This document shows, piece by piece, positions 34,691 to 50,742 of a DNA stretch of 64,000 bases. The position numbers and the translations under genes were made by a program. The notes beneath the pieces were generated by a model. The model was not told where the DNA came from, searched no databases, and was given only the letters and a program-made list of their open reading frames with translations. The stretch comes from Convolutriloba macropyga (lineage: Eukaryota). Location: contig NC_134471.1 of the NCBI RefSeq assembly GCF_964194025.1, positions 3,782,001-3,846,000 of the forward strand. Reading direction: 5' to 3'. The number at the start of each line of letters is the position of its first letter. Positions within the stretch are counted from its first letter, which is position 1.

Positions 34691-37600
34691 TTCCTTGATC
34701 AGATAACCTTTGTTTTGTTGTTGTTGTTGTTATATTGAATTCCCAGTTGGCCTGGAGGGGGCAATATCCCCCGCTGTCTGTTCAGAAATTTGTCCAGTTG
34801 TTTCTGCAACACCCACAGTCGCAGCATAGCTGCCACGTGCAGACGTTGTTTTCGGATAACCGATTTTCCACGTGCCACCACATAAGATTGATGATTCTGT
34901 TCTTTAGTCCAACTTCGCAAATAAAGTCGACTTTCTCATGAATTCTGTTCACTACTCAGCAGTTCTGTAGACAAATTCAGTCATTCTTCGTTCAGTTTGT
35001 GTATTATTTAACTTCAGCGCTACTTGCCCTCTTCTGTTCCATGATTGAATGGGTATTGATTTTGTGCTCCTCAATGTCCTTGTAAGGTTTTGAAAGGAGC
35101 AGAAGATCATTCAATTGGATGAAGAGGGGTAGTGGTAGGACATTCAGTAGTCTCAACTGAGCTTTGTAGCCACTACGTGGGGGTCCACACACCCATTTCA
35201 GTACCCGCCTTTGAAGATTTTTGAGCTTCCGTTGATCTGTTCTAGATTGATACGCGCAATTCAGCCCGTAGAGCAAAACGGGTAGTATGACTGATTTGTA
35301 TAGGCCTAGTTTCACTGAGATTTTGAAATTGAAGGCAACGTTTCTCCTCATGCAGTAGAATACTTTATTTACTTCCGCGATTCGATGCTCGATGTGCGTA
35401 CTCCAAATTAACGTGTCCGCAATGTAGACTCCCAGGTCTTTCACTTTCCCAGGCTCCCCTAGCGGTTGTCCGTTTAATGATAGACATGCGCGTGTCCCTC
35501 GAAAGTTCAGTAAATGGCATTCGTGGACTGCTAGTTTCATTTTATTTGATTTACCCTTTTCCCAATTCTCTTTATATCAGTTTGGACTTCTTCGTTTGAT
35601 TTACCGATAGCTAGGATTTTTAGGTCGTCCGCAAAAATGAAAGTTTGGCTGAAAGTTAGAACATCGGTAAGATCGTTTATAAAGATGCAAAAGAGTAAAG
35701 GCCCCAGTAGGGAGCCTTGTGGTACAACGCTGGTCACCTGTAGTTCTCACGATGTGTGATCTTCAATTCTTACGTAATGTTTTCGCTGGCTTCGGTAGTC
35801 GTATAGGATGTCTAGAAAACGTCCACCTACGCCGATGTCACATAGTTTGGAGATGAGCAGTTCGTAGGGCACTGTGTCAAATGCTTTGGAAAAGTCACTG
35901 TAATATGCAAGGACTTGAGCAATTGGATCATTGTCCATGGCGACATATATTTCATTCAAGAATTGCAGAAGATTGCTCATCACCGATCTTTTCCTGACAA
36001 AAAGGTGTTGATTCTTCGACAGAAAGTTTTTGAAGTGTTTGTATAGCGATACGTGCATGCACTTTTCGAAGATCTTGCTTTCAAACCAATGGAGAGATAT
36101 GGGTCGGTAGTTTTCAACGAGTTTCGGATTGTCCTTTTTTTACACTGGTACTATGGCCACTGTCTTCCAAAACAAGGGTAGTTTCCTGATACGTTTGAAA
36201 TTTTTGAACATGGTTTTTAACGTTCTACACACTTTTTTCTTTGTTGCTTTGAAGAAGATTGGCGGTAGATTGTTGGGGCCCCGGGAATTCCTGATGTCAA
36301 GCTCGCCCAAAAATTTTCGATTAATGCAACGGAGACTTTGAAGTTCTGGAGTTTGGCTTTCTGGTTTTGGTATCTGTTGACAGTGAACGGTGCTTTTGTT
36401 GCGAACACAGAGTGGAAAATTAGTTGAACAGTTCCGCTTTGCTCTGGGTTGTGCTTTTATATTCTACAGTCTTTGGTATTCGAGGTGTTTGTTTATGTAT
36501 TTCAAATGTCGAAAGATTTCACTGGTGTTTCTAGTGCCGAACACTTTTTCATGATAAGCGATGCGATCGGCTTCCCAATTTTTGAGCACTTCCGCTTCAA
36601 GGGCACGCACTTTGTTCTTCCTGTAGATAGTGGGGCGGGTAGCTAGCATGATCCGTTGGGTATTCAGCCTTTTCATTTGATTTGAAGTGGCAGCGGCTAT
36701 CCAGGGGGTAAGGTTTTGTCGAAACCGAGTTCTTCTTGGAACATGGTTCGGTTGTCGATTAGTGTCATGGAGTAATCCTGGAATTCGTTGTACATGTTAA
36801 TTGCATTTGAGAAGCATAGAAATTGGAAAGGGTTCGATGACATGTCGCACAGCATAGGGTCACAGTCTGCTTTGGTGAAACTGTAATAACGTTCTTTAGT
36901 CCGTTGTTCTTGTTGGTAATCAATTTCTAAGGACGAAAATACAGGAAGATGATCAATACTGTCGTAGAGGGCCTTGAAACTGTTGTCAATTTGGGAGAAT
37001 ACCTAGCAGTTTTGGTAGAGCAGTACATCAAGCATAACTTTACCGCAAGTTGGGAAGTCAATAGCCTGTCTGAGGAGACGCTCTTCGAGGATGTTTAGGA
37101 CATCCGGTTCCACTTTGTCGGTGCTCCAATAAGCTTTCCAGTTCGTTGAAGGAAAATTTGGATCGCCACATATAACCTCTTTCCGGTTTTTGGGAATGGC
37201 CTATAGTATATGATGGTAACAGTCAACATCATACCTGTACTGGATGTTCGGCGGTGGATTGTAAAAAGAGCAGATATGTATCTCTTCGCTGATCAACCTG
37301 ATTTTGCATATTATACAACACTCAACATCCACCTTAATGTTCTCAGAGCCTAAATAGTTTTCACTGCAATCAAGGATTCGCCGTGCAGGTTGATGTTACG
37401 ATGTTCTCTTTCTGACCAGTATATAGAATAGTCGTTTAGTAGTAGTTAGGAGTCTGGAATGCCTTGGTTTAGCCAAGTCTCGCGGATGCATATAACGTTG
37501 TACGACCCAAAGTTTATAGCGTTTGACATTTTGAAACGTCTTTGGCAATCCACGAGACTGCGGGCGTTAAACTGCAGGATCTGGAGATGAGATAGTGGTA

Positions 37601-38678
37601 CCTCTATTCCGTCGTTGTATTTCGTGAAGTTCCTTATCTTCAGTTTATCCCTTTCAACGCCTTGTTCAATGAGTTCCTTACGCTTTTTAAGACAGATATT
37701 TTTATTGCAGGAATCCTTAATTGAGAGGGTTCGCGAGACAAACACGTTCAAGTCTTTCAGTTCTTGTTGTCGTTGCAAACTTTTGACCCTGACAAGTTTG
37801 ACGGCAGTGGCACTAGGCAAAGTGACAAGAACAGCACGTGGTTTGGGTCGTTCCTTCTGGAGTTTTCCCAGCCACCTGAGGTTGACAATCTCAGCTTCCA
37901 TTCCTAAGGTTTTCAAAATGTGGCTTACATGTTCATATGTTGGGACAAAAATCTGGTCGCGAGTTTTGTATGGATCTTCTGGGATCCCTTGTACTCTAAA
38001 ACTCATTTCAATGTTGTGGGGAAACTTATGTTGCGCTCTTTTGGGGTTTTTGACATAGTCACTTTTTTGTTGTCCTCTACTTTGTTGACTACGCTGGCAT
38101 AACTTTCTTCCACTATTTCGTGTGTTTTCGTCATCGCTTCGTTGATCTTCTCTTCCACTAAATCAGTTACTTTTGCTTCGATGTTTTCCATTTTTGCTGT
38201 CACCTTGAGTTGGCCGATGTTATCATTTACTTGCATCACAAGTCGGTTTCGGATGAAAGCATCTTGTTCGTTGTTGTTCACGCAAGCAGTGCAGAGCAGC
38301 ATGGCATTTTGTCCAAACTCTTTGGTTCCGATAGATGCTACTGGCGATAGCCCCGTGCAGGCTGGATCAAGATCTAGATGACAATTGCATGCCACGCAAT
38401 TGAAGGTCTGATCGCGGTTTGGAATGTTTTTCTTGTAAATTCAACAAGAACGAGTCATTTTGACTAGAACTAGTTGCCTGGAAAGTTGCTGGAGAGAGTG
38501 TCAGTCACCTTTGGCCCAGTATTTAAACGGCGCCTTTGGTAAACAGAAAGGACAGAGAAGGATAGACTTATCAGACAACTTATCAGATAGGCCAATTGGT
38601 TTCCTAGATATTTCCGCTCCCCTTGGCCCAGTAATTAAACGGCACCGTAGGAAGCAAAAATTACTAAGAAACCTGTAC

Positions 38679-39303
38679 CTAGTGCTTTGTAGTTACGTCT
38701 GCAGCAGCTTTCTTTCTTTTACTCTGCGAAAGTCGCTTGTTCTTTTTACGATTTTCTTGATATCGTAGTCGTAGCCTCTTAAAGTTGTCAGAAATTTGAC
38801 TTCCAAGAACGGTCTGACGTGTAGTTTTTGGATAGGGTTTGGTGTAGTCGGGATTGTTCTGCTTCTGCTTTGACAGAAGATCCTTTGTTAGGTGAAGTAC
38901 TGGGATTCGGAGTTTCAGTAGGTCTTTGAAGAGGTCGGGAGCTGTGGACGTTGGCGTCTTTCTCTGGACGTATACGATTCCCACCAGGTTTGGGATTCGT
39001 TCCAGTTCCTTTCCCGTCGTAATTGGGGTCCTGGGATGCTTAGGGTGGGATGTCACGCTGTTGTTGATGACGTCGTGCCACAGGATCACCGGTGACTCGC
39101 GGGGGATGTTGATATCAAAGACACTTACTGGGCTGGGCATCTGGATAAACACTCTGACCTGGGACTGACTCAACGCGTATTGGGAGGGTCCTTCTGACCT
39201 CTGGTGACGTCTTGAGGATCACACTTCTACCAAATCGCTCTCGAGTGGCAGGGTATTTGTCAAGAGCTCTGCTCAGTGAACTGGCAGCTATCACGAATTG
39301 CAT
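38679..39303 (-). pseudogene. Extra upstream ORF A of the LINE (WHDVINNS type, possibly SGNH-like), frameshifted
   Basis: Joining frames gives MQFVIAASSLSRAL...SVPGQSVYPDAQPSKCL...PVILWHDVINNSVTSHP...LVGIVYVQRK...APDLFKDL..LRIPVLHLTKDLLSK. Confidence 0.55.
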
Positions 39304-39329
39304 ATGGGACCACAACTGCTGTCCCACAA

Positions 39330-39824
39330 AGTCAATATATCTGAAGCTATTTAATAATATCTGAAACTGTTTTGTGAGAAGTTGCCTCTGAATTTGATTT
39401 ATCGTGGTCTTCTTGCTTCGAAACTTGTACGAAATGTTCGGGGTCTCAAGGTGTTGAAGTTATACAATATTAGCGATTCTGTGCTTCAACTGGTTCTTTT
39501 TGTTAACTATTTCCCGAACAGTAAGTTTTCCTACTTTTTTTGTTTATTTGGTCACCGCCAGATGTTGATGCATCCCTGTTAGATGATGATAGGTTTCGGT
39601 TTCCCTTCAAGTAGGTGTGCAGCTGTTCCGGATTTCGAGGTCTTGGGTTGTGGTAATTGAAACTGAAGCATCTCACATCGGAAGTGTGTCTGCAGAGCTT
39701 CTTTTTCAGGCTTTTGGGATCGTCTCGAAGGGCGTTGTCGAGTTGAATTGTACCAAGGATAAACATGCAAACAAGCTAGTCTTTACAAACTCTTTCGGGA
39801 GATCCACTTACCAATCGCAGACAT
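39330..39824 (-). pseudogene. Extra upstream ORF B, apparent paralog of ORF A, frameshifted
   Basis: MFILGTIQLDNAL...FSFNYHNPRP...KPIII*QGCINIW...HRIANIV*LQHLETPNISYKF...QIQRQLLTKQ aligns block by block with ORF A. Confidence 0.45.
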
Positions 39825-40119
39825 AACTCCAGAAACTATATAATAAGTTTGTCACAACAATCAGTTTATTTCAATAAATAACTAATATTAAGATAGCATG
39901 TAAATTTAATATTTGGCTATAACAATTTATTTGTTTGAGATTTTTTCTTAAAAAGAAAATAAAATTGGCTGGTCTGTGGTCCTCCTAGCATTACGTTGAC
40001 ATGAAGTCCTTTGTTTTTTTTGAGTTTTTCTTTAAAATGTAGATTGTTAAATATGAGGACAAATAATGTCTATTGAGAGGCAAAGATTGAATGAGACCAC
40101 AGCAAAACACGCCTTCTAA

Positions 40120-40245
40120 ACTTCAATAGAAGGATAAAGGCGTCTACTGATCTACTATGACAATTGAAAACCAACAGAACCTTGGGCTCAATTTTTCTGC
40201 GAATCTGTCTTGGAATGAAAACTGCTCATTCAGGAAGCAATGAGA
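40120..40245 (+). mobile_element. Short LINE RT C-terminal fragment
   Basis: QQNLGLNF/SANLSW remnant resembles the KDLG..NLSW region of CR1-like ORF2. Confidence 0.4.
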
Positions 40246-46389: not shown

Positions 46390-49300
46390 ATAAAGAATAG
46401 ATTAGAAGGAAGAGGCTGAGGCTTATTAACTAATTGTATAAATCCACTAATTATTTACTAGCTAATTTTAGCTCAATTACCACTAATTATAGTACGCCTA
46501 ACACGCTTGTGTTCGCCTGCACTGGCAGCGCAGGGCCTACATCTACAAGAGCTCTCAAACAGAGCACTGCTAAGATCAGCGAAAACTGCAAGGAACCGTA
46601 CGCAAGGAAACGGACTTCGCTCGATTCTGATAAAACGAGTATTATACAAATATTTATCAAGCGAAACAGCAGCAAATTACGAACCAAACGTATATCAGTG
46701 CTCACGACAGTCTGGCTGCGGTGCCTTTACTGGCCTAGGTTGGCGCCCTATCGTACGTGTAGTGATTGTTTTTCTTTTCTTGACTTGGCACCAGGTCACT
46801 CTCGTGAGGTTTCATTGCCTATTTGTCAAGGAAAGAAAAGAACACTAGCCCCTCTCTGTTTTCCATTGTGTGATTGTTTTGGCTGGCTTTAGGTCACCTA
46901 TCGACAGGTTTCACTGGCAGAAAGCCAAAACAAGCACCGTTCTATTTCCAGATAAAAAGTTCTCGCAGCAATAAATACAAAACGAAATACTGCCAAATTG
47001 AGTTGAAAACAATTAACTATAGCAAATCATCAGTAACGTACAAAAAGTGGGCAATCGAAAATGCAAAACGTGCAATAGAATAATTGATAACAAGGCAGCA
47101 GTTTTTCATTGTATTGCATGCGGAGAATGCATGCACCTAACAAGAAGTTGCACAGGTATGACGAAGCAATGATTGGTATAAGCTCAATAATAAATAACAT
47201 CGTGCTTTTCTGCCAAGATTGCGTCAACCTCAAGGAAAAAGTTGTAATACTGGATCGAATTTTTAAAGCTCAGAGCCAAGTGGATTTTATCTCTGAAGTC
47301 AAGACAGAGATTGGTACAATCAAAGCTGAGGTTCAGAATAGTAACCTGGCCATGAAAGCCCAGCAACGTGAATTGAATGAAGTCATTAATGCACAAACAG
47401 CGCCACCTCCAGAGCAAAAATCGGTACCAAGACCAGTGCAAAATAAAACAAATAAACGGGATCAGTTGACGGTATTGGACTATATGGTATCCCAGAGCTA
47501 AAATTTAACGATAGTCGGAACCGGTATGAACAAGACCTCAAGAAGTGAGAGAAATAGCAAAGCATTTGAAAGTCACCTGAACTGCCACAGACCTAAGAAA
47601 ATAGGAAAATTTACGGACGGAAAAAATCGGACATTTATAGTCAAATTAGGCAGTGACTATTCAAAGCGATTGATTCTGCTATCTCTTCGTAAGCTGAAAG
47701 TCTACGAAAAACCCGTATACATCAGCAGAGAACAAAACCCCGATGAACAAATAATTGAAATTGAATACCTGTAAAAAAGACGAGCCCTTCTCAGAAGCGG
47801 AATAGATGCAAAGCAACTAAGAAGAAGAAATCTCACTCTGCAACAAGGAATTGATAAAATATGGGTGGATGTTCAAAACCTCCGACTCACTTTGACTAGC
47901 TAATCCAGTTTTACATGTAATGACTTTAAATGTTAGATGCTTGATTGAATTAAAAAGAAGAGTTAACTTTGCAAAAGGCCTGAGTTGCGAGAACAATATC
48001 GATATAATCTGTCTGACTGAAACTTGGTTCACAGATGATATACCTGATGAAGCTCTGTTCCAGAAAGTTACACCATTCATCGGAACGACATAGCCTCAAC
48101 CACAAAACAAATCACGGGGGTGATGGTTTCAGTAAAGAACGTACCGCCTAAAAGATTGAATTTAGAACCAGAAATGAGTATGTAGCCAGAAAAGTTGAAC
48201 TCGAAGATCTGTCATAAATAATTTGTTGTTTCTACAATCCACCTAAGACTAGCCATTACAGAGGGAAGATCAAGATGTGTTGGCACTAATTGGTTGCCTT
48301 GGCAGGAAGGTAAAAGAGGAACACTGCAATGCAATAGTAATCTCTGGTGATATTAATTTTGAGAGCAAATTGGACAAGTCTCATAAATTGACAAATATGA
48401 AAACGACGTTAGTTAAAATTTGCTGAAATGCTAAAGATAAAATGCAAAAAGCAACTGGATATCATCATAGAATTAATCCAAACACGATTATTAAGACAAA
48501 TGAAAACAATGAGTTCAACAGGTCATACAGCTCGGACCATCGAGCCAACATAGTATCATTACAATGTGAAATCAAATGCGAAATACAGCCAATGAGACAA
48601 AAATGCGCATTTAATAAAGTAAACTGAAAACAGCTAAACAATCCGCTTTTAATAAATCCATTCCGACCGTTTTGCTTCAGTAACGTTAACGAACTAGTGA
48701 AAGTGGTATCAGTGGCTTGAAAAAATGTTAAATAACAGTGTGCCTAAAACCACATCACATAGATCTAAGTTGCCTCCAAGGGTAAAAAGCAATACCTCTC
48801 ATCTCATGAAGAAATTGTCAACTCTGAAGAGACAAATCTCAAAAAGATCAAGTCTGACAAAACTTATCAAGATTAAGAAAAAGGTCTACGTAAAACTCTT
48901 GAAGCAGATCAAAAGGCTTTTGAAGAAAAAACTTCCACGGAAGAAAATTTTCCGACTTCCAGAAATGTTTACGTTAATACACAAAACAGCGGATTCCCAG
49001 AAACGATGCGGTTCAAAGATTGCACAACTATTAATGATAAACAACAACGTTTTTCTGTAAGTTCTTCACCGTTGTTTTTACAAAAACTGACAGAATTCAA
49101 GAAATTGTTATCGATTTCAAACCCAACCTTTTCAATAAGGTAATAATTGATGAAACAAAAATCAAACAAATCCTTGAAAAACTAGACACAAACAAGGCAT
49201 GAGGTCCCGAAAACATGATGAATCTTATCCCGAAAAAACTTCCAAGCCTTTTGAAGTCTCTCTTAATTGTTTTCAAAACTGCTCTCGTAAAGGGGCCAAT

Positions 49301-50742
49301 TCCCGACCTTTTGAAAAACCCCTGAAGTACCAGTTTTTAAGGACAATGACAAAGCTGACATTGAGCAGTTTAGACCTCTGCATTATCTCAAAAGTCCTAG
49401 AAAAACTGATATTTGACGAATTATACGAAATTGTCACAAGTTTACACTACACGCAGCATATATTCAGACGAAGGCGATCTGTCATCACGCAAATGCTAGT
49501 CTTTCTTAACAAGCTCTATGACTACTACGACGGCAACACGATTGAACTGTACGTATTGTAGTTAGACTTTGAGAAAGCATCTGACAGCGTCCCGCATTGG
49601 CCACTGATGAATAAGGTACAGGGTTTGGGCGTTGGAGATTTTTCCTAAAATGCTCTCAAGTTAATTGACTAACAGAAAGCAATGTAAATGTTTATGAAGT
49701 GATTTCGGAAACAATTAGAGTAACAAGCAGAGTGCCCCAAGATTGGCTACTTGGGCCTTTACTTTTTGTTATCTATATTAATGATCTGCCTCAACAAGTA
49801 GAACAGTGAACCATTCGGCTACGCTGACGATTATAGACTTGTCACAAGCGATCCAGCTACACTCCAAGCCTTTATTGACAAAAATAGAAAAATGGTGCAA
49901 AGAGCAGATGGAATTAAATGAAAACAAATGTTACCTTTACCTATCAAAAAAGAAAACAACTGTAATCTTACGCTAAATGGCAGACAACTGGAGTCAAAAA
50001 TGAACAGAAAGATTTAGGAGTTGTAATGTCAACGAAACTCACCTTTAACTTAATTGTGAAACCCGGTGCTCAAAAGCCTGGAAAGCGTACTATTTCCTGA
50101 AACGAAACGTCTCTACGCAGTCTAATGTAAAAACAAATTTTAATGCATATGCCGGCTATGTTTTACTGCTAATAAACTACGCTTCCTAGTTCTATTGTGC
50201 AAACAAAACTGAAATGAAGGATCGTGAAAAAGTTCAGTGCACAGCTACAATTCGGATTTTGAATTATTGGAGCACTATTTATAAGACCAGCAGACTGGAA
50301 ACCCTCAAGATTTCACCACTTTCAATGTATTTAGAACTTCATGACGTCCTTTTTTTACTGTCGTTTCTCAAAGAGAATTTTGATATCGATCTACCAATAA
50401 GAGTAAATTCAGAGGAAAAATGCTGTGACAAAAACGAGGCAAGAGGATTTTATAGAAGTACAAAAAACACGCACGAAAAAGGCTGACGAGAATTTTTGGA
50501 CTAGATCCAGCCGTCTTTTAAACAGAATTTCCAAACTTACATGTACATTAACATGCGAAGTCAACAAATCTCAATTAACCAAGATCTACTGGAATTACTT
50601 TATCAAGAGTTAGGCAGATTCATTAAATTTATGTTCAGGGACTTTCTTGTGCAATCCAGTCCAGAAAGTCGACTTAGCTGTGAAGTGACGTACCCAAGCC
50701 CCGAATCAGACTGATTCAAAACCACTACTACTGCTACTATTT
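46390..50742 (+). mobile_element. Near full-length decayed CR1/L2-group LINE in the DNAJC19 intron (PHD ORF1, APE+RT ORF2, (ACT)n tail)
   Basis: ORF1 from ~47047: CKTC..CIACGECMH..CTG..CQDC, then YGIPE. ORF2: TLNVR, CLTETW, YNPP, SGDINF, SSDH, LDFEKA, YADD, KDLG. Tail accactactactgctact at 50721-50738. 5' boundary approximate. Confidence 0.9.

What the first reader, a model, noticed from the sequence alone, without database searches (positions are those of the whole stretch)
38500..39850. LINE apparently carrying two paralogous extra ORFs (WHDVINNS type, possibly SGNH-like) upstream of its PHD ORF1
Seen: on the LINE strand and 5' of ORF1 (ATG 38458), ~1.3 kb with the same GC content encodes two head-to-tail broken ORFs that align block by block. 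The pairs are FVIAASSLSRAL / FILGTIQLDNAL; PVILWHDVINNS / PIII*QGCINIW; LVGIVYVQRK..APDLF / IANIV*LQHLETPNIS; HLTKDLLSKQ / QIQRQLLTKQ. Composition becomes AT-rich at ~39850. Known: CR1/L2 LINEs normally have two ORFs, and some ORF1 proteins (e.g. ZfL2-1) carry an SGNH esterase domain. Inference: this family has a four-ORF layout with a duplicated free-standing esterase-like accessory module in addition to a PHD ORF1. The SGNH call rests only on the spacing of strand-(G/A)xSS, PG and HDxxNN blocks.
Basis: partly seen in the sequence, partly recalled or inferred. Interest (0 to 1): 0.75.

Follow-up and report, generated by a model that had tools for sequence, protein, structure and literature searches.

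The report
Esterase-fold first gene of a LINE
A dead jumping gene (LINE) here starts with its own small extra gene for an esterase-shaped protein, and the "second copy" just upstream is a broken piece of the same kind of gene from a different element, not part of this LINE's design.

Summary

- **Module A (39303-38679, minus strand)** is the frameshifted first ORF (ORF0) of a ~4.65 kb LINE (39357 to ~34708). Four other full-length copies in the same organism start at the same nucleotide and all carry A.
- **Module B (39766 to ~39367)** lies outside that unit. The other copies have unrelated upstream flanks, and contig depth falls from repeat level to single-copy level at 39357. B still matches a family profile built without the window's family (21 bits, against a maximum of 10 in 1000 shuffles). 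It is a decayed ORF0 fragment of another retroelement, cut at about family position 135.
- **ORF0 family:** at least 900 clusters of ~200-aa proteins with no Pfam or PDB sequence match. An AlphaFold2 model (pLDDT 86.5) matches only SGNH/GDSL hydrolases (Z up to 11.2). Ser, Gly, Asn and His are conserved; the triad Asp is absent.
- **Other carriers:** the same ORF heads other LINEs, a BEL/Pao element and a gypsy-like element.
- **Expression:** ORF0 is nearly AUG-free with a weak start, which suggests leaky scanning to ORF1. The ORF1 stop and ORF2 start overlap as AUGA.

Earlier notes of this scan report the three-ORF plan elsewhere in this genome.

The parts
34708..39357 (-). Whole LINE copy (dead), ~4.65 kb, from its 5' end at 39357 to the (AAC)n tail at ~34708
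   Evidence: blastn to five paralogous copies at 84-90% identity covers 39357 to ~34710. Four copies share the 5' end with unrelated flanks. The 3' ends align up to an (AAC)n run. Contig depth is 100-1600 inside the LINE and ~34 outside it.
39304..39357 (-). Short 5' leader of the LINE (~54 nt)
   Evidence: Lies between the shared 5' end and the ORF0 ATG, which is shared by 5 of 5 copies.
38679..39303 (-). ORF0 (module A), an SGNH-fold accessory gene, pseudogenised here. Breaks: 2 nt missing at ~39127 (shared with L001), 9 nt missing in frame at ~39014, 1 nt extra at 38830, 1 nt missing at ~38745. Stop TAG at 38681-38679.
   Evidence: Profile hits in three frames cover profile positions 1-193. 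Indel map against five copies. The breaks are private or shared with one copy, so the ORF was open in the source element. Family, fold and conservation.
38459..38678 (-). ORF0-ORF1 spacer with a 32-nt direct repeat (38508-38539 and 38620-38651)
   Evidence: the repeat finder D1, 84% identity, 112 nt apart. No ATG in the spacer is shared among copies.
38003..38458 (-). ORF1: Cys-rich (PHD-like, unconfirmed) finger followed by a predicted coiled-coil stretch. ATG 38458, private stop at codon 6, TGA at 38005-38003.
   Evidence: ATG shared by 5 of 5 copies. Open in the majority frame from 38500 to 38008 and ended by a stop present in 4 of 4 copies. No Pfam hit.
34782..38006 (-). ORF2: RRM-like N-terminal domain, then AP endonuclease, then reverse transcriptase, broken by many private stops. 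Its ATG (38006-38004) overlaps the ORF1 stop as ATGA.
   Evidence: ATGA is present in the window, L001 and L002. RVT_1 hits. tblastn with APE, RT and the 202-aa RRM-like ORF of L006. The majority frame is open to a stop shared by 5 of 5 copies at ~34784.
39367..39766 (-). Module B: decayed, 3'-truncated ORF0 homologue of another retroelement. Three pieces lie in three frames (39766-39650, ~39593-39558, 39537-39367) with several stops. It covers family positions ~1-135.
   Evidence: Profile built without the window's family: 20.4 bits. Shuffle control: 0 of 1000 reach it. Ordered tblastn hits of family members. Single-copy depth. No close homologue by word search.
39767..39850 (-). Possible leader of the B fragment, up to the switch to AT-rich DNA
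   Evidence: GC 0.44 at 39550-39849 against 0.30 at 39850-40149. The boundary is inferred and was not tested.
39358..39372 (-). 15-nt duplicate of LINE positions 6-20 (39352-39338), sitting between B and the LINE's first base
   Evidence: the repeat finder D2, 14 of 16 identical, 20 nt apart. Sequence read. A 385-nt contig with no differences spans 39288-39672 in three runs, so the junction is not an assembly artefact.

Best explanation
The window holds one dead, full-length copy of a three-cistron LINE on the minus strand. Its first gene, ORF0 (module A), encodes a ~205-aa stand-alone protein with an SGNH-hydrolase fold and a basic tail. It is followed by a Cys-rich/coiled-coil ORF1 and by an ORF2 carrying RRM-like, endonuclease and reverse transcriptase domains.

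ORF0 is a portable retroelement accessory gene. The same family heads other LINE families, a BEL/Pao element and a gypsy-like element.

Inferred mechanism of expression: one mRNA is made. ORF0 has a weak start (pyrimidine at -3) and almost no internal AUG in any frame, so part of the scanning ribosomes pass it and start at ORF1, which has A at -3. ORF2 is then reached by termination-reinitiation at the overlapping AUGA.

Inferred function: the conserved Ser (in GASS), Gly, Asn and His suggest a Ser-His esterase/lipase. By analogy with the ZfL2-1 esterase it would act on membranes or lipids during particle assembly or transport.

Module B is not part of this design. It is an older, single-copy, 3'-truncated ORF0 fragment of a different element joined to this LINE's 5' end. 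The join most likely arose when the reverse transcriptase jumped from the end of the LINE RNA to another ORF0-bearing RNA. Alternatively the LINE landed inside that element and the rest was lost.
For: Shown here:
- The unit boundary at 39357 is shared by four copies with unrelated flanks. Depth drops at that point and contigs bridge the junction.
- Family: 900 representative clusters at E<=1e-3 and 589 at E<=1e-10, mostly 190-215 aa. Many intact members are known.
- Between families, synonymous sites are saturated (pS 0.77-0.91) while pN is 0.42-0.49.
- AlphaFold2 model: pLDDT 86.5, pTM 0.80.
- Every one of the top 50 VIA matches is an SGNH/GDSL hydrolase. Z reaches 11.2 over 146-156 residues, with PAF-AH at 9.1-9.4 and the Oskar OSK domain at 8.6. 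Foldseek's best hits are GDSL lipases at probability ~1.
- Conserved residues in 119 representatives: S8 86% (about 95% of those present), G33 85%, W63-H64-D65 91-96%, N69 92%, H149 95%, E155 86%.
- Genomic contexts: LINEs in L005, L006 and L013; BEL/Pao in L007; gypsy-like pol in L008-L012.
- AUG depletion: only the ORF0 and ORF1 ATGs are shared, with 2-5 ATGs per copy against ~13 expected. In intact elements there are 0-1 ATGs in 758-871 nt against ~13 expected. The -3 base is a pyrimidine at ORF0 and A at the next ORF.
- AUGA overlap.
- B is a homologue. No continuation of B and no retroelement coding remnant follow the LINE's 3' end.
- A 15-nt duplicate of the LINE's own 5' region sits at the junction.
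Against: - No Pfam SGNH/GDSL family and no PDB sequence is hit, including the ZfL2-1 esterase, even with profiles. Membership therefore rests on a predicted fold.
- The triad Asp (DxxH) is not conserved, and the block III Asn assignment is ambiguous (WHD or NN), so activity is uncertain.
- Residue equivalences were inferred from order and secondary structure, not from a superposition.
- All paralogues were found through ORF0 itself, so copies lacking ORF0 could not have been sampled.
- Leaky scanning and reinitiation are inferred from sequence only. No RNA run was available.
- No target-site duplication was found, so template switching and nested insertion with deletion cannot be told apart.
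Confidence: 0.82

Rival explanations
1. One reading: the LINE family itself has four ORFs, with a tandemly duplicated esterase-like module (B then A) ahead of ORF1.
For: B and A are homologous, head to tail, on the same strand and only ~10-60 nt apart. One reading frame runs from B into A.
Against: - Four other full-length copies start at 39357 with mutually unrelated flanks and lack B.
- B is at single-copy depth while the LINE is at repeat depth.
- B stops at about family position 135 of 195, so it is not a complete module.
- B is no closer to A than to distant family members. A against B gives E 0.06-0.4, while other members hit B at 5e-8.
Confidence: 0.03
2. ORF0 is a non-catalytic SGNH-fold protein, like the OSK domain of Oskar. 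It would act as an RNA- or lipid-binding scaffold, with the basic tail binding the element's RNA, rather than as an esterase.
For: - The Asp of GDS is replaced by Ala and the DxxH Asp is missing.
- There is no sequence-profile match to active SGNH families.
- OSK matches at Z 8.6.
- The Lys/Arg-rich C-terminal tail is conserved.
- Loss of activity in SGNH proteins is documented (PMC3905857).
Against: Ser8 and His149 are among the best conserved residues across 119 diverged representatives, together with Gly33 and Asn69. That pattern is what selection on catalysis would give. OSK is not a better match than active esterases.
Confidence: 0.3
3. B came to lie next to A by nested insertion. The LINE landed inside ORF0 of an older element, and the remainder of that element was deleted at integration or later. 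No template switching was involved.
For: B looks more decayed than A, with at least two frameshifts and several stops in 400 nt. B is an orphan with no close paralogue, which fits an older age. Retroelements often nest.
Against: - Nothing resembling the rest of ORF0, or any APE, RT, gag or pol, follows the LINE tail within 10 kb.
- There is no LTR pair.
- A 5'-terminal, 3'-truncated fragment in the same orientation, joined to the very 5' end of a full-length LINE through a 15-nt extra copy of LINE sequence, is what template jumping predicts.
Confidence: 0.4
4. B is a chance resemblance in ordinary flanking DNA.
For: Direct comparison of A and B is not significant, and B has no homologue by word search.
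Against: An independent profile gives 21 bits against a maximum of 10 in 1000 shuffles. Three pieces lie in the right order with the right spacing, and several single family members hit both halves.
Confidence: 0.02

Closest known systems
Esterase (ES) domain of type IV LINE ORF1 proteins: CR1, L2 and RTEX, e.g. ZfL2-1 ORF1p, PDB 4c1b (PMC3905857, PMC4120745)
   Same: An SGNH-fold module encoded in the first reading frame of a non-LTR retrotransposon, upstream of pol. It is associated in evolution with PHD fingers, and Ser, Gly, Asn and His are retained.
   Different: - Here it is a free-standing ~200-aa ORF with only a basic tail, not a domain fused to a coiled coil or zinc finger.
- The finger/coiled-coil protein is a separate second ORF, giving three cistrons.
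- The motif is GASS instead of GDS, and there is no DxxH Asp.
- No detectable sequence similarity to 4c1b or to Pfam GDSL families.
- The published survey found esterase-type ORF1 only in two vertebrate CR1/L2 groups (PMC4120745).
GDSL esterase/lipase ORF3 of bdelloid rotifer LTR retrotransposons (Vesta), shared with Athena/Terminon elements (PMC5408684)
   Same: An SGNH-type accessory ORF carried as a separate gene and shared between very different retroelement classes.
   Different: - The rotifer ORF lies downstream of pol (ORF3) and keeps canonical GDSL blocks.
- Here the ORF is always the first cistron, upstream of gag, ORF1 or pol.
- It belongs to a divergent family unrecognised by Pfam and shows AUG depletion.
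OSK domain of Drosophila Oskar (PDB 5a4a)
   Same: An SGNH-like fold lacking part of the catalytic apparatus, in an RNA-granule context. Z 8.6 to the model.
   Different: OSK has lost the catalytic Ser and His. The ORF0 family conserves both.
LINE chimeras made by template switching of the reverse transcriptase (U6-L1 type chimeric retrocopies; end-to-end jumping of R2 reverse transcriptase). Cited from general knowledge, not checked in a paper here.
   Same: The 5' part of a foreign RNA is fused in the same orientation to LINE sequence, with extra short copied segments at the junction.
   Different: Here the LINE part is full length, the foreign part is another retroelement's 5' end, and no target-site duplication could be found to prove a single event.

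Membership tests
SGNH/GDSL hydrolase superfamily | Flavodoxin-like alpha/beta/alpha fold with five parallel strands | tested here: met
   AlphaFold2 model of the natural member P0012 has pLDDT 86.5 and five strands alternating with helices. The top 50 matches of both VIA searches are all SGNH/GDSL, with Z up to 11.2, rmsd 2.9-3.9 and 145-156 residues aligned.
SGNH/GDSL hydrolase superfamily | Block I Gly-Asp-Ser with the nucleophile Ser right after strand 1 | tested here: inconclusive
   GASS follows strand 1 (residues 2-6) and Ser8 is conserved in about 95% of sequences that cover it. Asp is replaced by Ala. Equivalence to the nucleophile is inferred from position, not from a superposition.
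SGNH/GDSL hydrolase superfamily | Block II Gly and block III Asn (oxyanion hole) | tested here: inconclusive
   Gly33 after strand 2 is 85% conserved. After strand 3 comes W63-H64-D65 and then N68-N69 (83-96%). Which residue takes the Asn role is unresolved.
SGNH/GDSL hydrolase superfamily | Block V Asp-x-x-His | tested here: not met
   His149 is 95% conserved in a loop before the C-terminal helices, but no Asp is conserved three residues before it. Glu155 is 86% conserved.
SGNH/GDSL hydrolase superfamily | Sequence-profile membership (Pfam Lipase_GDSL families; solved SGNH sequences) | tested here: not met
   No SGNH or GDSL family at E<=1 for any of 25 members. Profile searches against PDB sequences gave only chance-level hits.
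SGNH/GDSL hydrolase superfamily | Hydrolytic activity on esters | not testable with these tools
   Needs expression and an enzyme assay.
Type IV LINE ORF1 (esterase-containing ORF1 of CR1/L2) | Esterase domain in one polypeptide with a coiled coil or zinc finger/PHD | tested here: not met
   ORF0 ends at a stop (TAG 38681-38679, further shared stops at 38666) and ORF1 starts 220 nt later. Intact relatives are stand-alone proteins of 190-215 aa. One fused ORF0-PHD product of 377 aa exists in L014.
Type IV LINE ORF1 (esterase-containing ORF1 of CR1/L2) | Detectable homology to the ZfL2-1/CR1 esterase | tested here: not met
   4c1b is not found by profile-to-sequence search and is not among the listed structural matches. 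Absence from those lists is weak evidence.
APE-type non-LTR retrotransposon (LINE) | AP endonuclease plus reverse transcriptase in one strand, a 3' simple-repeat tail, and 5'-truncated copies | tested here: met
   RVT_1. APE and RT tblastn hits. (AAC)n tail. L003 is 5'-truncated at 39001. The clade (CR1/L2/other) was not determined.
APE-type non-LTR retrotransposon (LINE) | Target-site duplication | tested here: inconclusive
   No match of 7 nt or more between the 3' flank and 750 nt upstream of the LINE.
   Absent from L001, L002, L004 and L005. B is at single-copy depth.
PHD finger (for ORF1 of this family) | C4HC3 pattern or a Pfam PHD match | tested here: not met
   No Pfam hit for the window piece or the L005 piece. 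No significant similarity to PHD-bearing ORFs of L005 or L013 beyond the last CxxC. Only seven Cys/His ligands are visible.

The most novel reading that the evidence does not exclude
ORF0 is a previously undescribed, catalytically active Ser-His branch of the SGNH fold. It moves as a gene cassette between LINEs, BEL/Pao and gypsy-like elements. It is always placed first and kept AUG-free, so that one mRNA yields both it and the downstream gag/ORF1 by leaky scanning. The B-A junction would then be a fossil of reverse-transcriptase template jumping between two ORF0-bearing RNAs, which would be one route by which the cassette is exchanged between element classes.
Probability: 0.3. Interest if true: 0.75.

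Novelty: new variant of a known kind. Interest (0 to 1): 0.55.

Why it matters
SGNH esterases are the only enzymatic ORF1 modules known in LINEs, and their role is still unclear. This work shows three things:

- A divergent branch, missed by Pfam, is very large. It has at least 900 clusters at 50% identity.
- It is carried as a separate first cistron by LINEs and by two classes of LTR element.
- It has a recurring translational layout: a weak start, an AUG-free body and a strong next start.

That layout gives a testable model for how three-cistron retroelement mRNAs are decoded. It also gives a set of intact natural proteins for asking what an esterase fold does in retrotransposition.

For annotation, the result warns that two adjacent homologous ORFs need not mean a duplicated module. 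Here one belongs to a neighbouring fragment.

Tried and rejected
- **Direct A against B comparison.** DNA local alignment, repeat finder and tblastn were all non-significant. Only a family profile showed the homology.
- **Pfam on the window's own ORF pieces and PDB sequence searches with two profiles.** Nothing relevant was found.
- **Other copies inside the window.** None found.
- **Continuation of B beyond the LINE tail,** by profile, by 214 family proteins and by APE/RT/gag/pol queries. None found.
- **LTR pair or target-site duplication.** None found.
- **Word search with B's own ORF.** No homologue.
- **Names or organisms for family members.** None are named. All come from ENA assemblies or Logan.
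- **Within-family dN/dS.** Uninformative, because copies decay neutrally. Only the between-family pN/pS contrast is usable.
- **PHD assignment of ORF1.** Not confirmed.
- **An early idea that PHD, coiled coil, RRM and APE form one ORF.** Rejected, because the majority-frame analysis shows a stop shared by 4 of 4 copies at 38005 and an ATGA overlap.
- **RT clade.** Not determined, as no reference set was at hand.
- **Source organism.** I did not verify this.
Full report
**1. What is in the sequence**

The minus strand between ~34700 and 39360 carries a decayed LINE. Reverse-transcriptase pieces (Pfam RVT_1) lie at 35537-36058. AP-endonuclease and RT similarity runs from 37359 to 35334. A Cys-rich ORF ends at 38003, and an ATG lies at 38458.

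Module A lies at 39327-38679 and module B at 39770-39367. GC drops from ~0.44 to ~0.30 at about 39850.

A and B share no DNA similarity. A translated comparison of the two alone is not significant, with best E of 0.06-0.4 in a 570-nt database.

**2. Limits of the LINE**

The 164-aa ORF of A found five paralogous gene calls at 64-76% identity. I fetched their contigs as L001-L005.

- blastn shows 84-90% identity from window 39357 down to ~34710. L003 is 5'-truncated at 39001.
- L001, L002, L004 and L005 all begin at the nucleotide equivalent to 39357.
- Their 800-nt upstream flanks resemble neither each other nor B.
- The 3' ends align up to an (AAC)n run at ~34712.

Contigs of public runs of the same organism agree. 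Summed depth is 100-1600 within 38000-39357 and a flat ~31-38 from 39358 to 40200. Paralogue contigs break off at exactly 39357 and 39339, with the flanks of L005 and L004. A 385-nt contig without differences bridges 39288-39672 in three runs.

So A belongs to the repeated unit, B is single-copy flank, and the junction is real. The four-ORF family layout is refuted.

**3. Module A is a real gene family with an SGNH fold**

A profile of the A pieces (A1) found 29 proteins by word search. These include intact 181-231-aa proteins at 28-46% identity with up to 21 cluster members. Their alignment (A2) shows these blocks:

- GASSL
- PG(L/Y)(S/N)
- (I/V)IxWHDxINNS
- IVYCxRxGAPD
- KDLLSKRK
- LHPxxxLE
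- a Lys/Arg-rich tail

An exhaustive HMMER search found 900 representative clusters at E<=1e-3, 589 at E<=1e-10 and 154 at E<=1e-30. Nearly all are stand-alone proteins of 190-215 aa. None carries a name in its source.

Neither Pfam (25 members scanned) nor PDB sequences give a relevant hit.

AlphaFold2 on the natural member P0012 with A2 gave pLDDT 86.5 and pTM 0.80, with five strands alternating with helices. The fold searches gave:

- **Foldseek:** best hits are GDSL-like lipases, PAF acetylhydrolase and thioesterase I, at probability 0.94-1.0 and E about 1e-3.
- **VIA-align:** run against 48,161 representative chains and again on Foldseek's top 1000. It lists only SGNH/GDSL proteins in its top 50, with Z up to 11.2, rmsd 2.9-3.9 and 145-156 aligned residues.
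- **Named matches:** PAF-AH scores Z 9.1-9.4 and the Oskar OSK domain 8.6.

Across 119 full-length representatives the best conserved polar residues are S8 (in GASS), G33, W63-H64-D65, N68-N69, Y103, R106, S132, H149 and E155.

- S8 follows strand 1, G33 follows strand 2, and WHD/NN follows strand 3.
- H149 sits in a loop before the C-terminal helices.
- These are the places where SGNH blocks I, II, III and V lie. This equivalence is inferred, not superposed.
- No Asp is conserved three residues before H149.

Between families, synonymous sites are saturated (pS 0.77-0.91) while pN is 0.42-0.49.

Sequence-profile membership and the canonical Asp are not met.

**4. State of A in this copy**

I aligned the six copies and compared them column by column.

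- The window's ORF0 lacks 2 nt at ~39127 (shared with L001) and 9 nt in frame at ~39014.
- It has 1 extra nt at 38830 and lacks 1 nt at ~38745.
- The other copies have different lesions. The ORF was therefore open in the source elements.
- The stop TAG at 38681-38679 is present in three copies, changed to TGG in two and to CAG in one. It is backed by stops shared 6 of 6 at 38666.

**5. Architecture and likely expression**

In majority-frame coordinates three ORFs appear:

- ORF0 runs from 39303 to 38679.
- ORF1 runs from the ATG at 38458 to a TGA at 38005-38003, present in 4 of 4 copies.
- ORF2 runs from an ATG at 38006 to a stop shared 5 of 5 at ~34784.

The ORF1 stop and the ORF2 start overlap as ATGA in the window, L001 and L002.

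ORF2 begins with an RRM-like domain. That domain is homologous to a separate 202-aa ORF in the L006 LINE (E 1e-23).

Between the 5' end and the ORF1 start (~900 nt), the only ATGs shared among copies are the ORF0 and ORF1 starts. Each copy has 2-5 ATGs against ~13 expected.

Intact relatives show the same pattern:

| Element | Internal ATGs | Length (nt) |
|---|---|---|
| LINE in L005 | 0 | 832 |
| BEL/Pao element in L007 | 1 | 871 |
| Gypsy-like element in L008 | 0 | 758 |

About 13 ATGs are expected in each case. The ORF0 AUG has a pyrimidine at -3, and the next ORF's AUG has A at -3. I infer leaky scanning past ORF0, then termination-reinitiation at AUGA for ORF2. Neither step is shown experimentally, and no RNA run was available.

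**6. The ORF is portable**

The same family lies directly upstream of several kinds of element:

- a PHD-APE ORF plus RT (L005, 13010)
- an RRM-like ORF, APE and RT (L006, 11133)
- Pfam-positive PHD ORFs, twice (L013, from another ENA assembly)
- a DUF1759 gag plus Pao-type pol (L007)
- a protease-RT-RNaseH-integrase pol (L008-L012, Logan contigs)

One 377-aa product fuses it to a PHD finger.

Published precedents:

- SGNH esterases as ORF1 domains in CR1, L2 and RTEX elements (PMC3905857, PMC4120745).
- GDSL ORF3 genes shared among rotifer LTR elements and Athena elements (PMC5408684).

My literature searches found no description of a stand-alone first-cistron form ahead of a PHD-type ORF1.

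Earlier notes of this scan report the same three-ORF plan, the LTR association and a leaky-scanning idea elsewhere in this genome. I reached the first two independently.

**7. What B is**

A profile built only from members outside the window's family matches B.

- It matches B at 39537-39367 on profile positions 80-136 with 20.4 bits (E 1.8e-8).
- It matches B's N-terminal piece at 39766-39650 on positions 2-40, weakly.
- The WHD-block remnant at ~39593-39558 lies between these two with the right spacing (read).
- In 1000 dinucleotide shuffles the best score was 10.0 against 21.0 observed.
- Single family members hit both halves in order, at E 5e-8 and 1e-6 and no more than 39% identity.

B is therefore a genuine but heavily decayed ORF0. 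It comes from a different lineage and is cut at about position 135 of 195, right at the LINE's 5' end.

- Nothing resembling its missing part, or any retroelement gene, follows the LINE tail.
- There is no LTR pair and no target-site duplication.
- B has no close paralogue.
- Between B and the LINE's first base lies a 15-nt second copy of LINE positions 6-20. L005 shows a similar 9-nt extra copy at its own 5' junction.

B is a 5'-terminal fragment of another RNA in the same orientation. It is fused through extra copied LINE nucleotides to a full-length LINE. That is what template jumping of the reverse transcriptase predicts, and I favour it slightly. Insertion into an older element with loss of the remainder is not excluded.

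**8. Verdict**

There are two homologous broken ORFs, but they do not form one unit.
The SGNH-like free-standing accessory ORF is linked to the LINE. The duplication and the four-ORF layout are not supported.
- The 'PHD' label for this family's ORF1 remains unconfirmed.
- The LINE's clade and the source organism were not determined here.

Noticed in passing
window 38508-38539 and 38620-38651: A 32-nt direct repeat (84% identity, 112 nt apart) lies inside the ORF0-ORF1 spacer of the LINE. Its role is unknown. It could be a structured element for translation of ORF1.
   Followed up: no
window 39358-39372 versus 39338-39352; L005 just upstream of 8034: Short extra copies of the LINE's own 5' terminal nucleotides sit at the 5' junction: 15 nt in the window and 9 nt in L005. 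This hints that the family's reverse transcriptase stutters or jumps at the end of its template.
   Followed up: partly
window ~39127 and L001 (equivalent position): The window copy and L001 share the same 2-nt deletion that breaks ORF0. If it was inherited from a common source element, an element with a broken ORF0 still retrotransposed, using ORF0 supplied in trans or not needed in cis. Recurrent slippage is not excluded.
   Followed up: no
window 38003-38006: The ORF1 stop and the ORF2 start overlap as ATGA in the window, L001 and L002. L005 has ATAAA at this place.
   Followed up: partly
window 38006-37540 versus L006 11822-12430: The RRM-like domain is the N-terminus of ORF2 in this family but a separate 202-aa ORF in the L006 LINE (31% identity, E 1e-23). 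Its first motif, FRVQGIPE, recalls the start of the L1 ORF1p RRM (from memory, not tested).
   Followed up: partly
window ~48500-49800, plus strand: A second, different LINE remnant with APE and RT similarity to the L006 element.
   Followed up: no
L014 132-1265 (P0102): A 377-aa gene call fuses the ORF0 domain to a Pfam-positive PHD finger in one reading frame. This is the order esterase-PHD in a single protein. The locus did not translate exactly to the query.
   Followed up: no
L008-L012 (Logan contigs): The ORF0 homologue P0029 sits in the gag position directly upstream of a 1296-aa protease-RT-RNaseH-integrase ORF. In several contigs it also sits directly after a pol ORF, as if the element were assembled in tandem or as a circle. 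No gag was called. The organism is unknown.
   Followed up: no
L006 7001-7591, 8588-8890 and 11133-11723: Three ORF0 copies lie within 5 kb: two intact 196-aa genes and one partial. This shows nested or tandem retroelements next to a CFAP99-like host gene.
   Followed up: no
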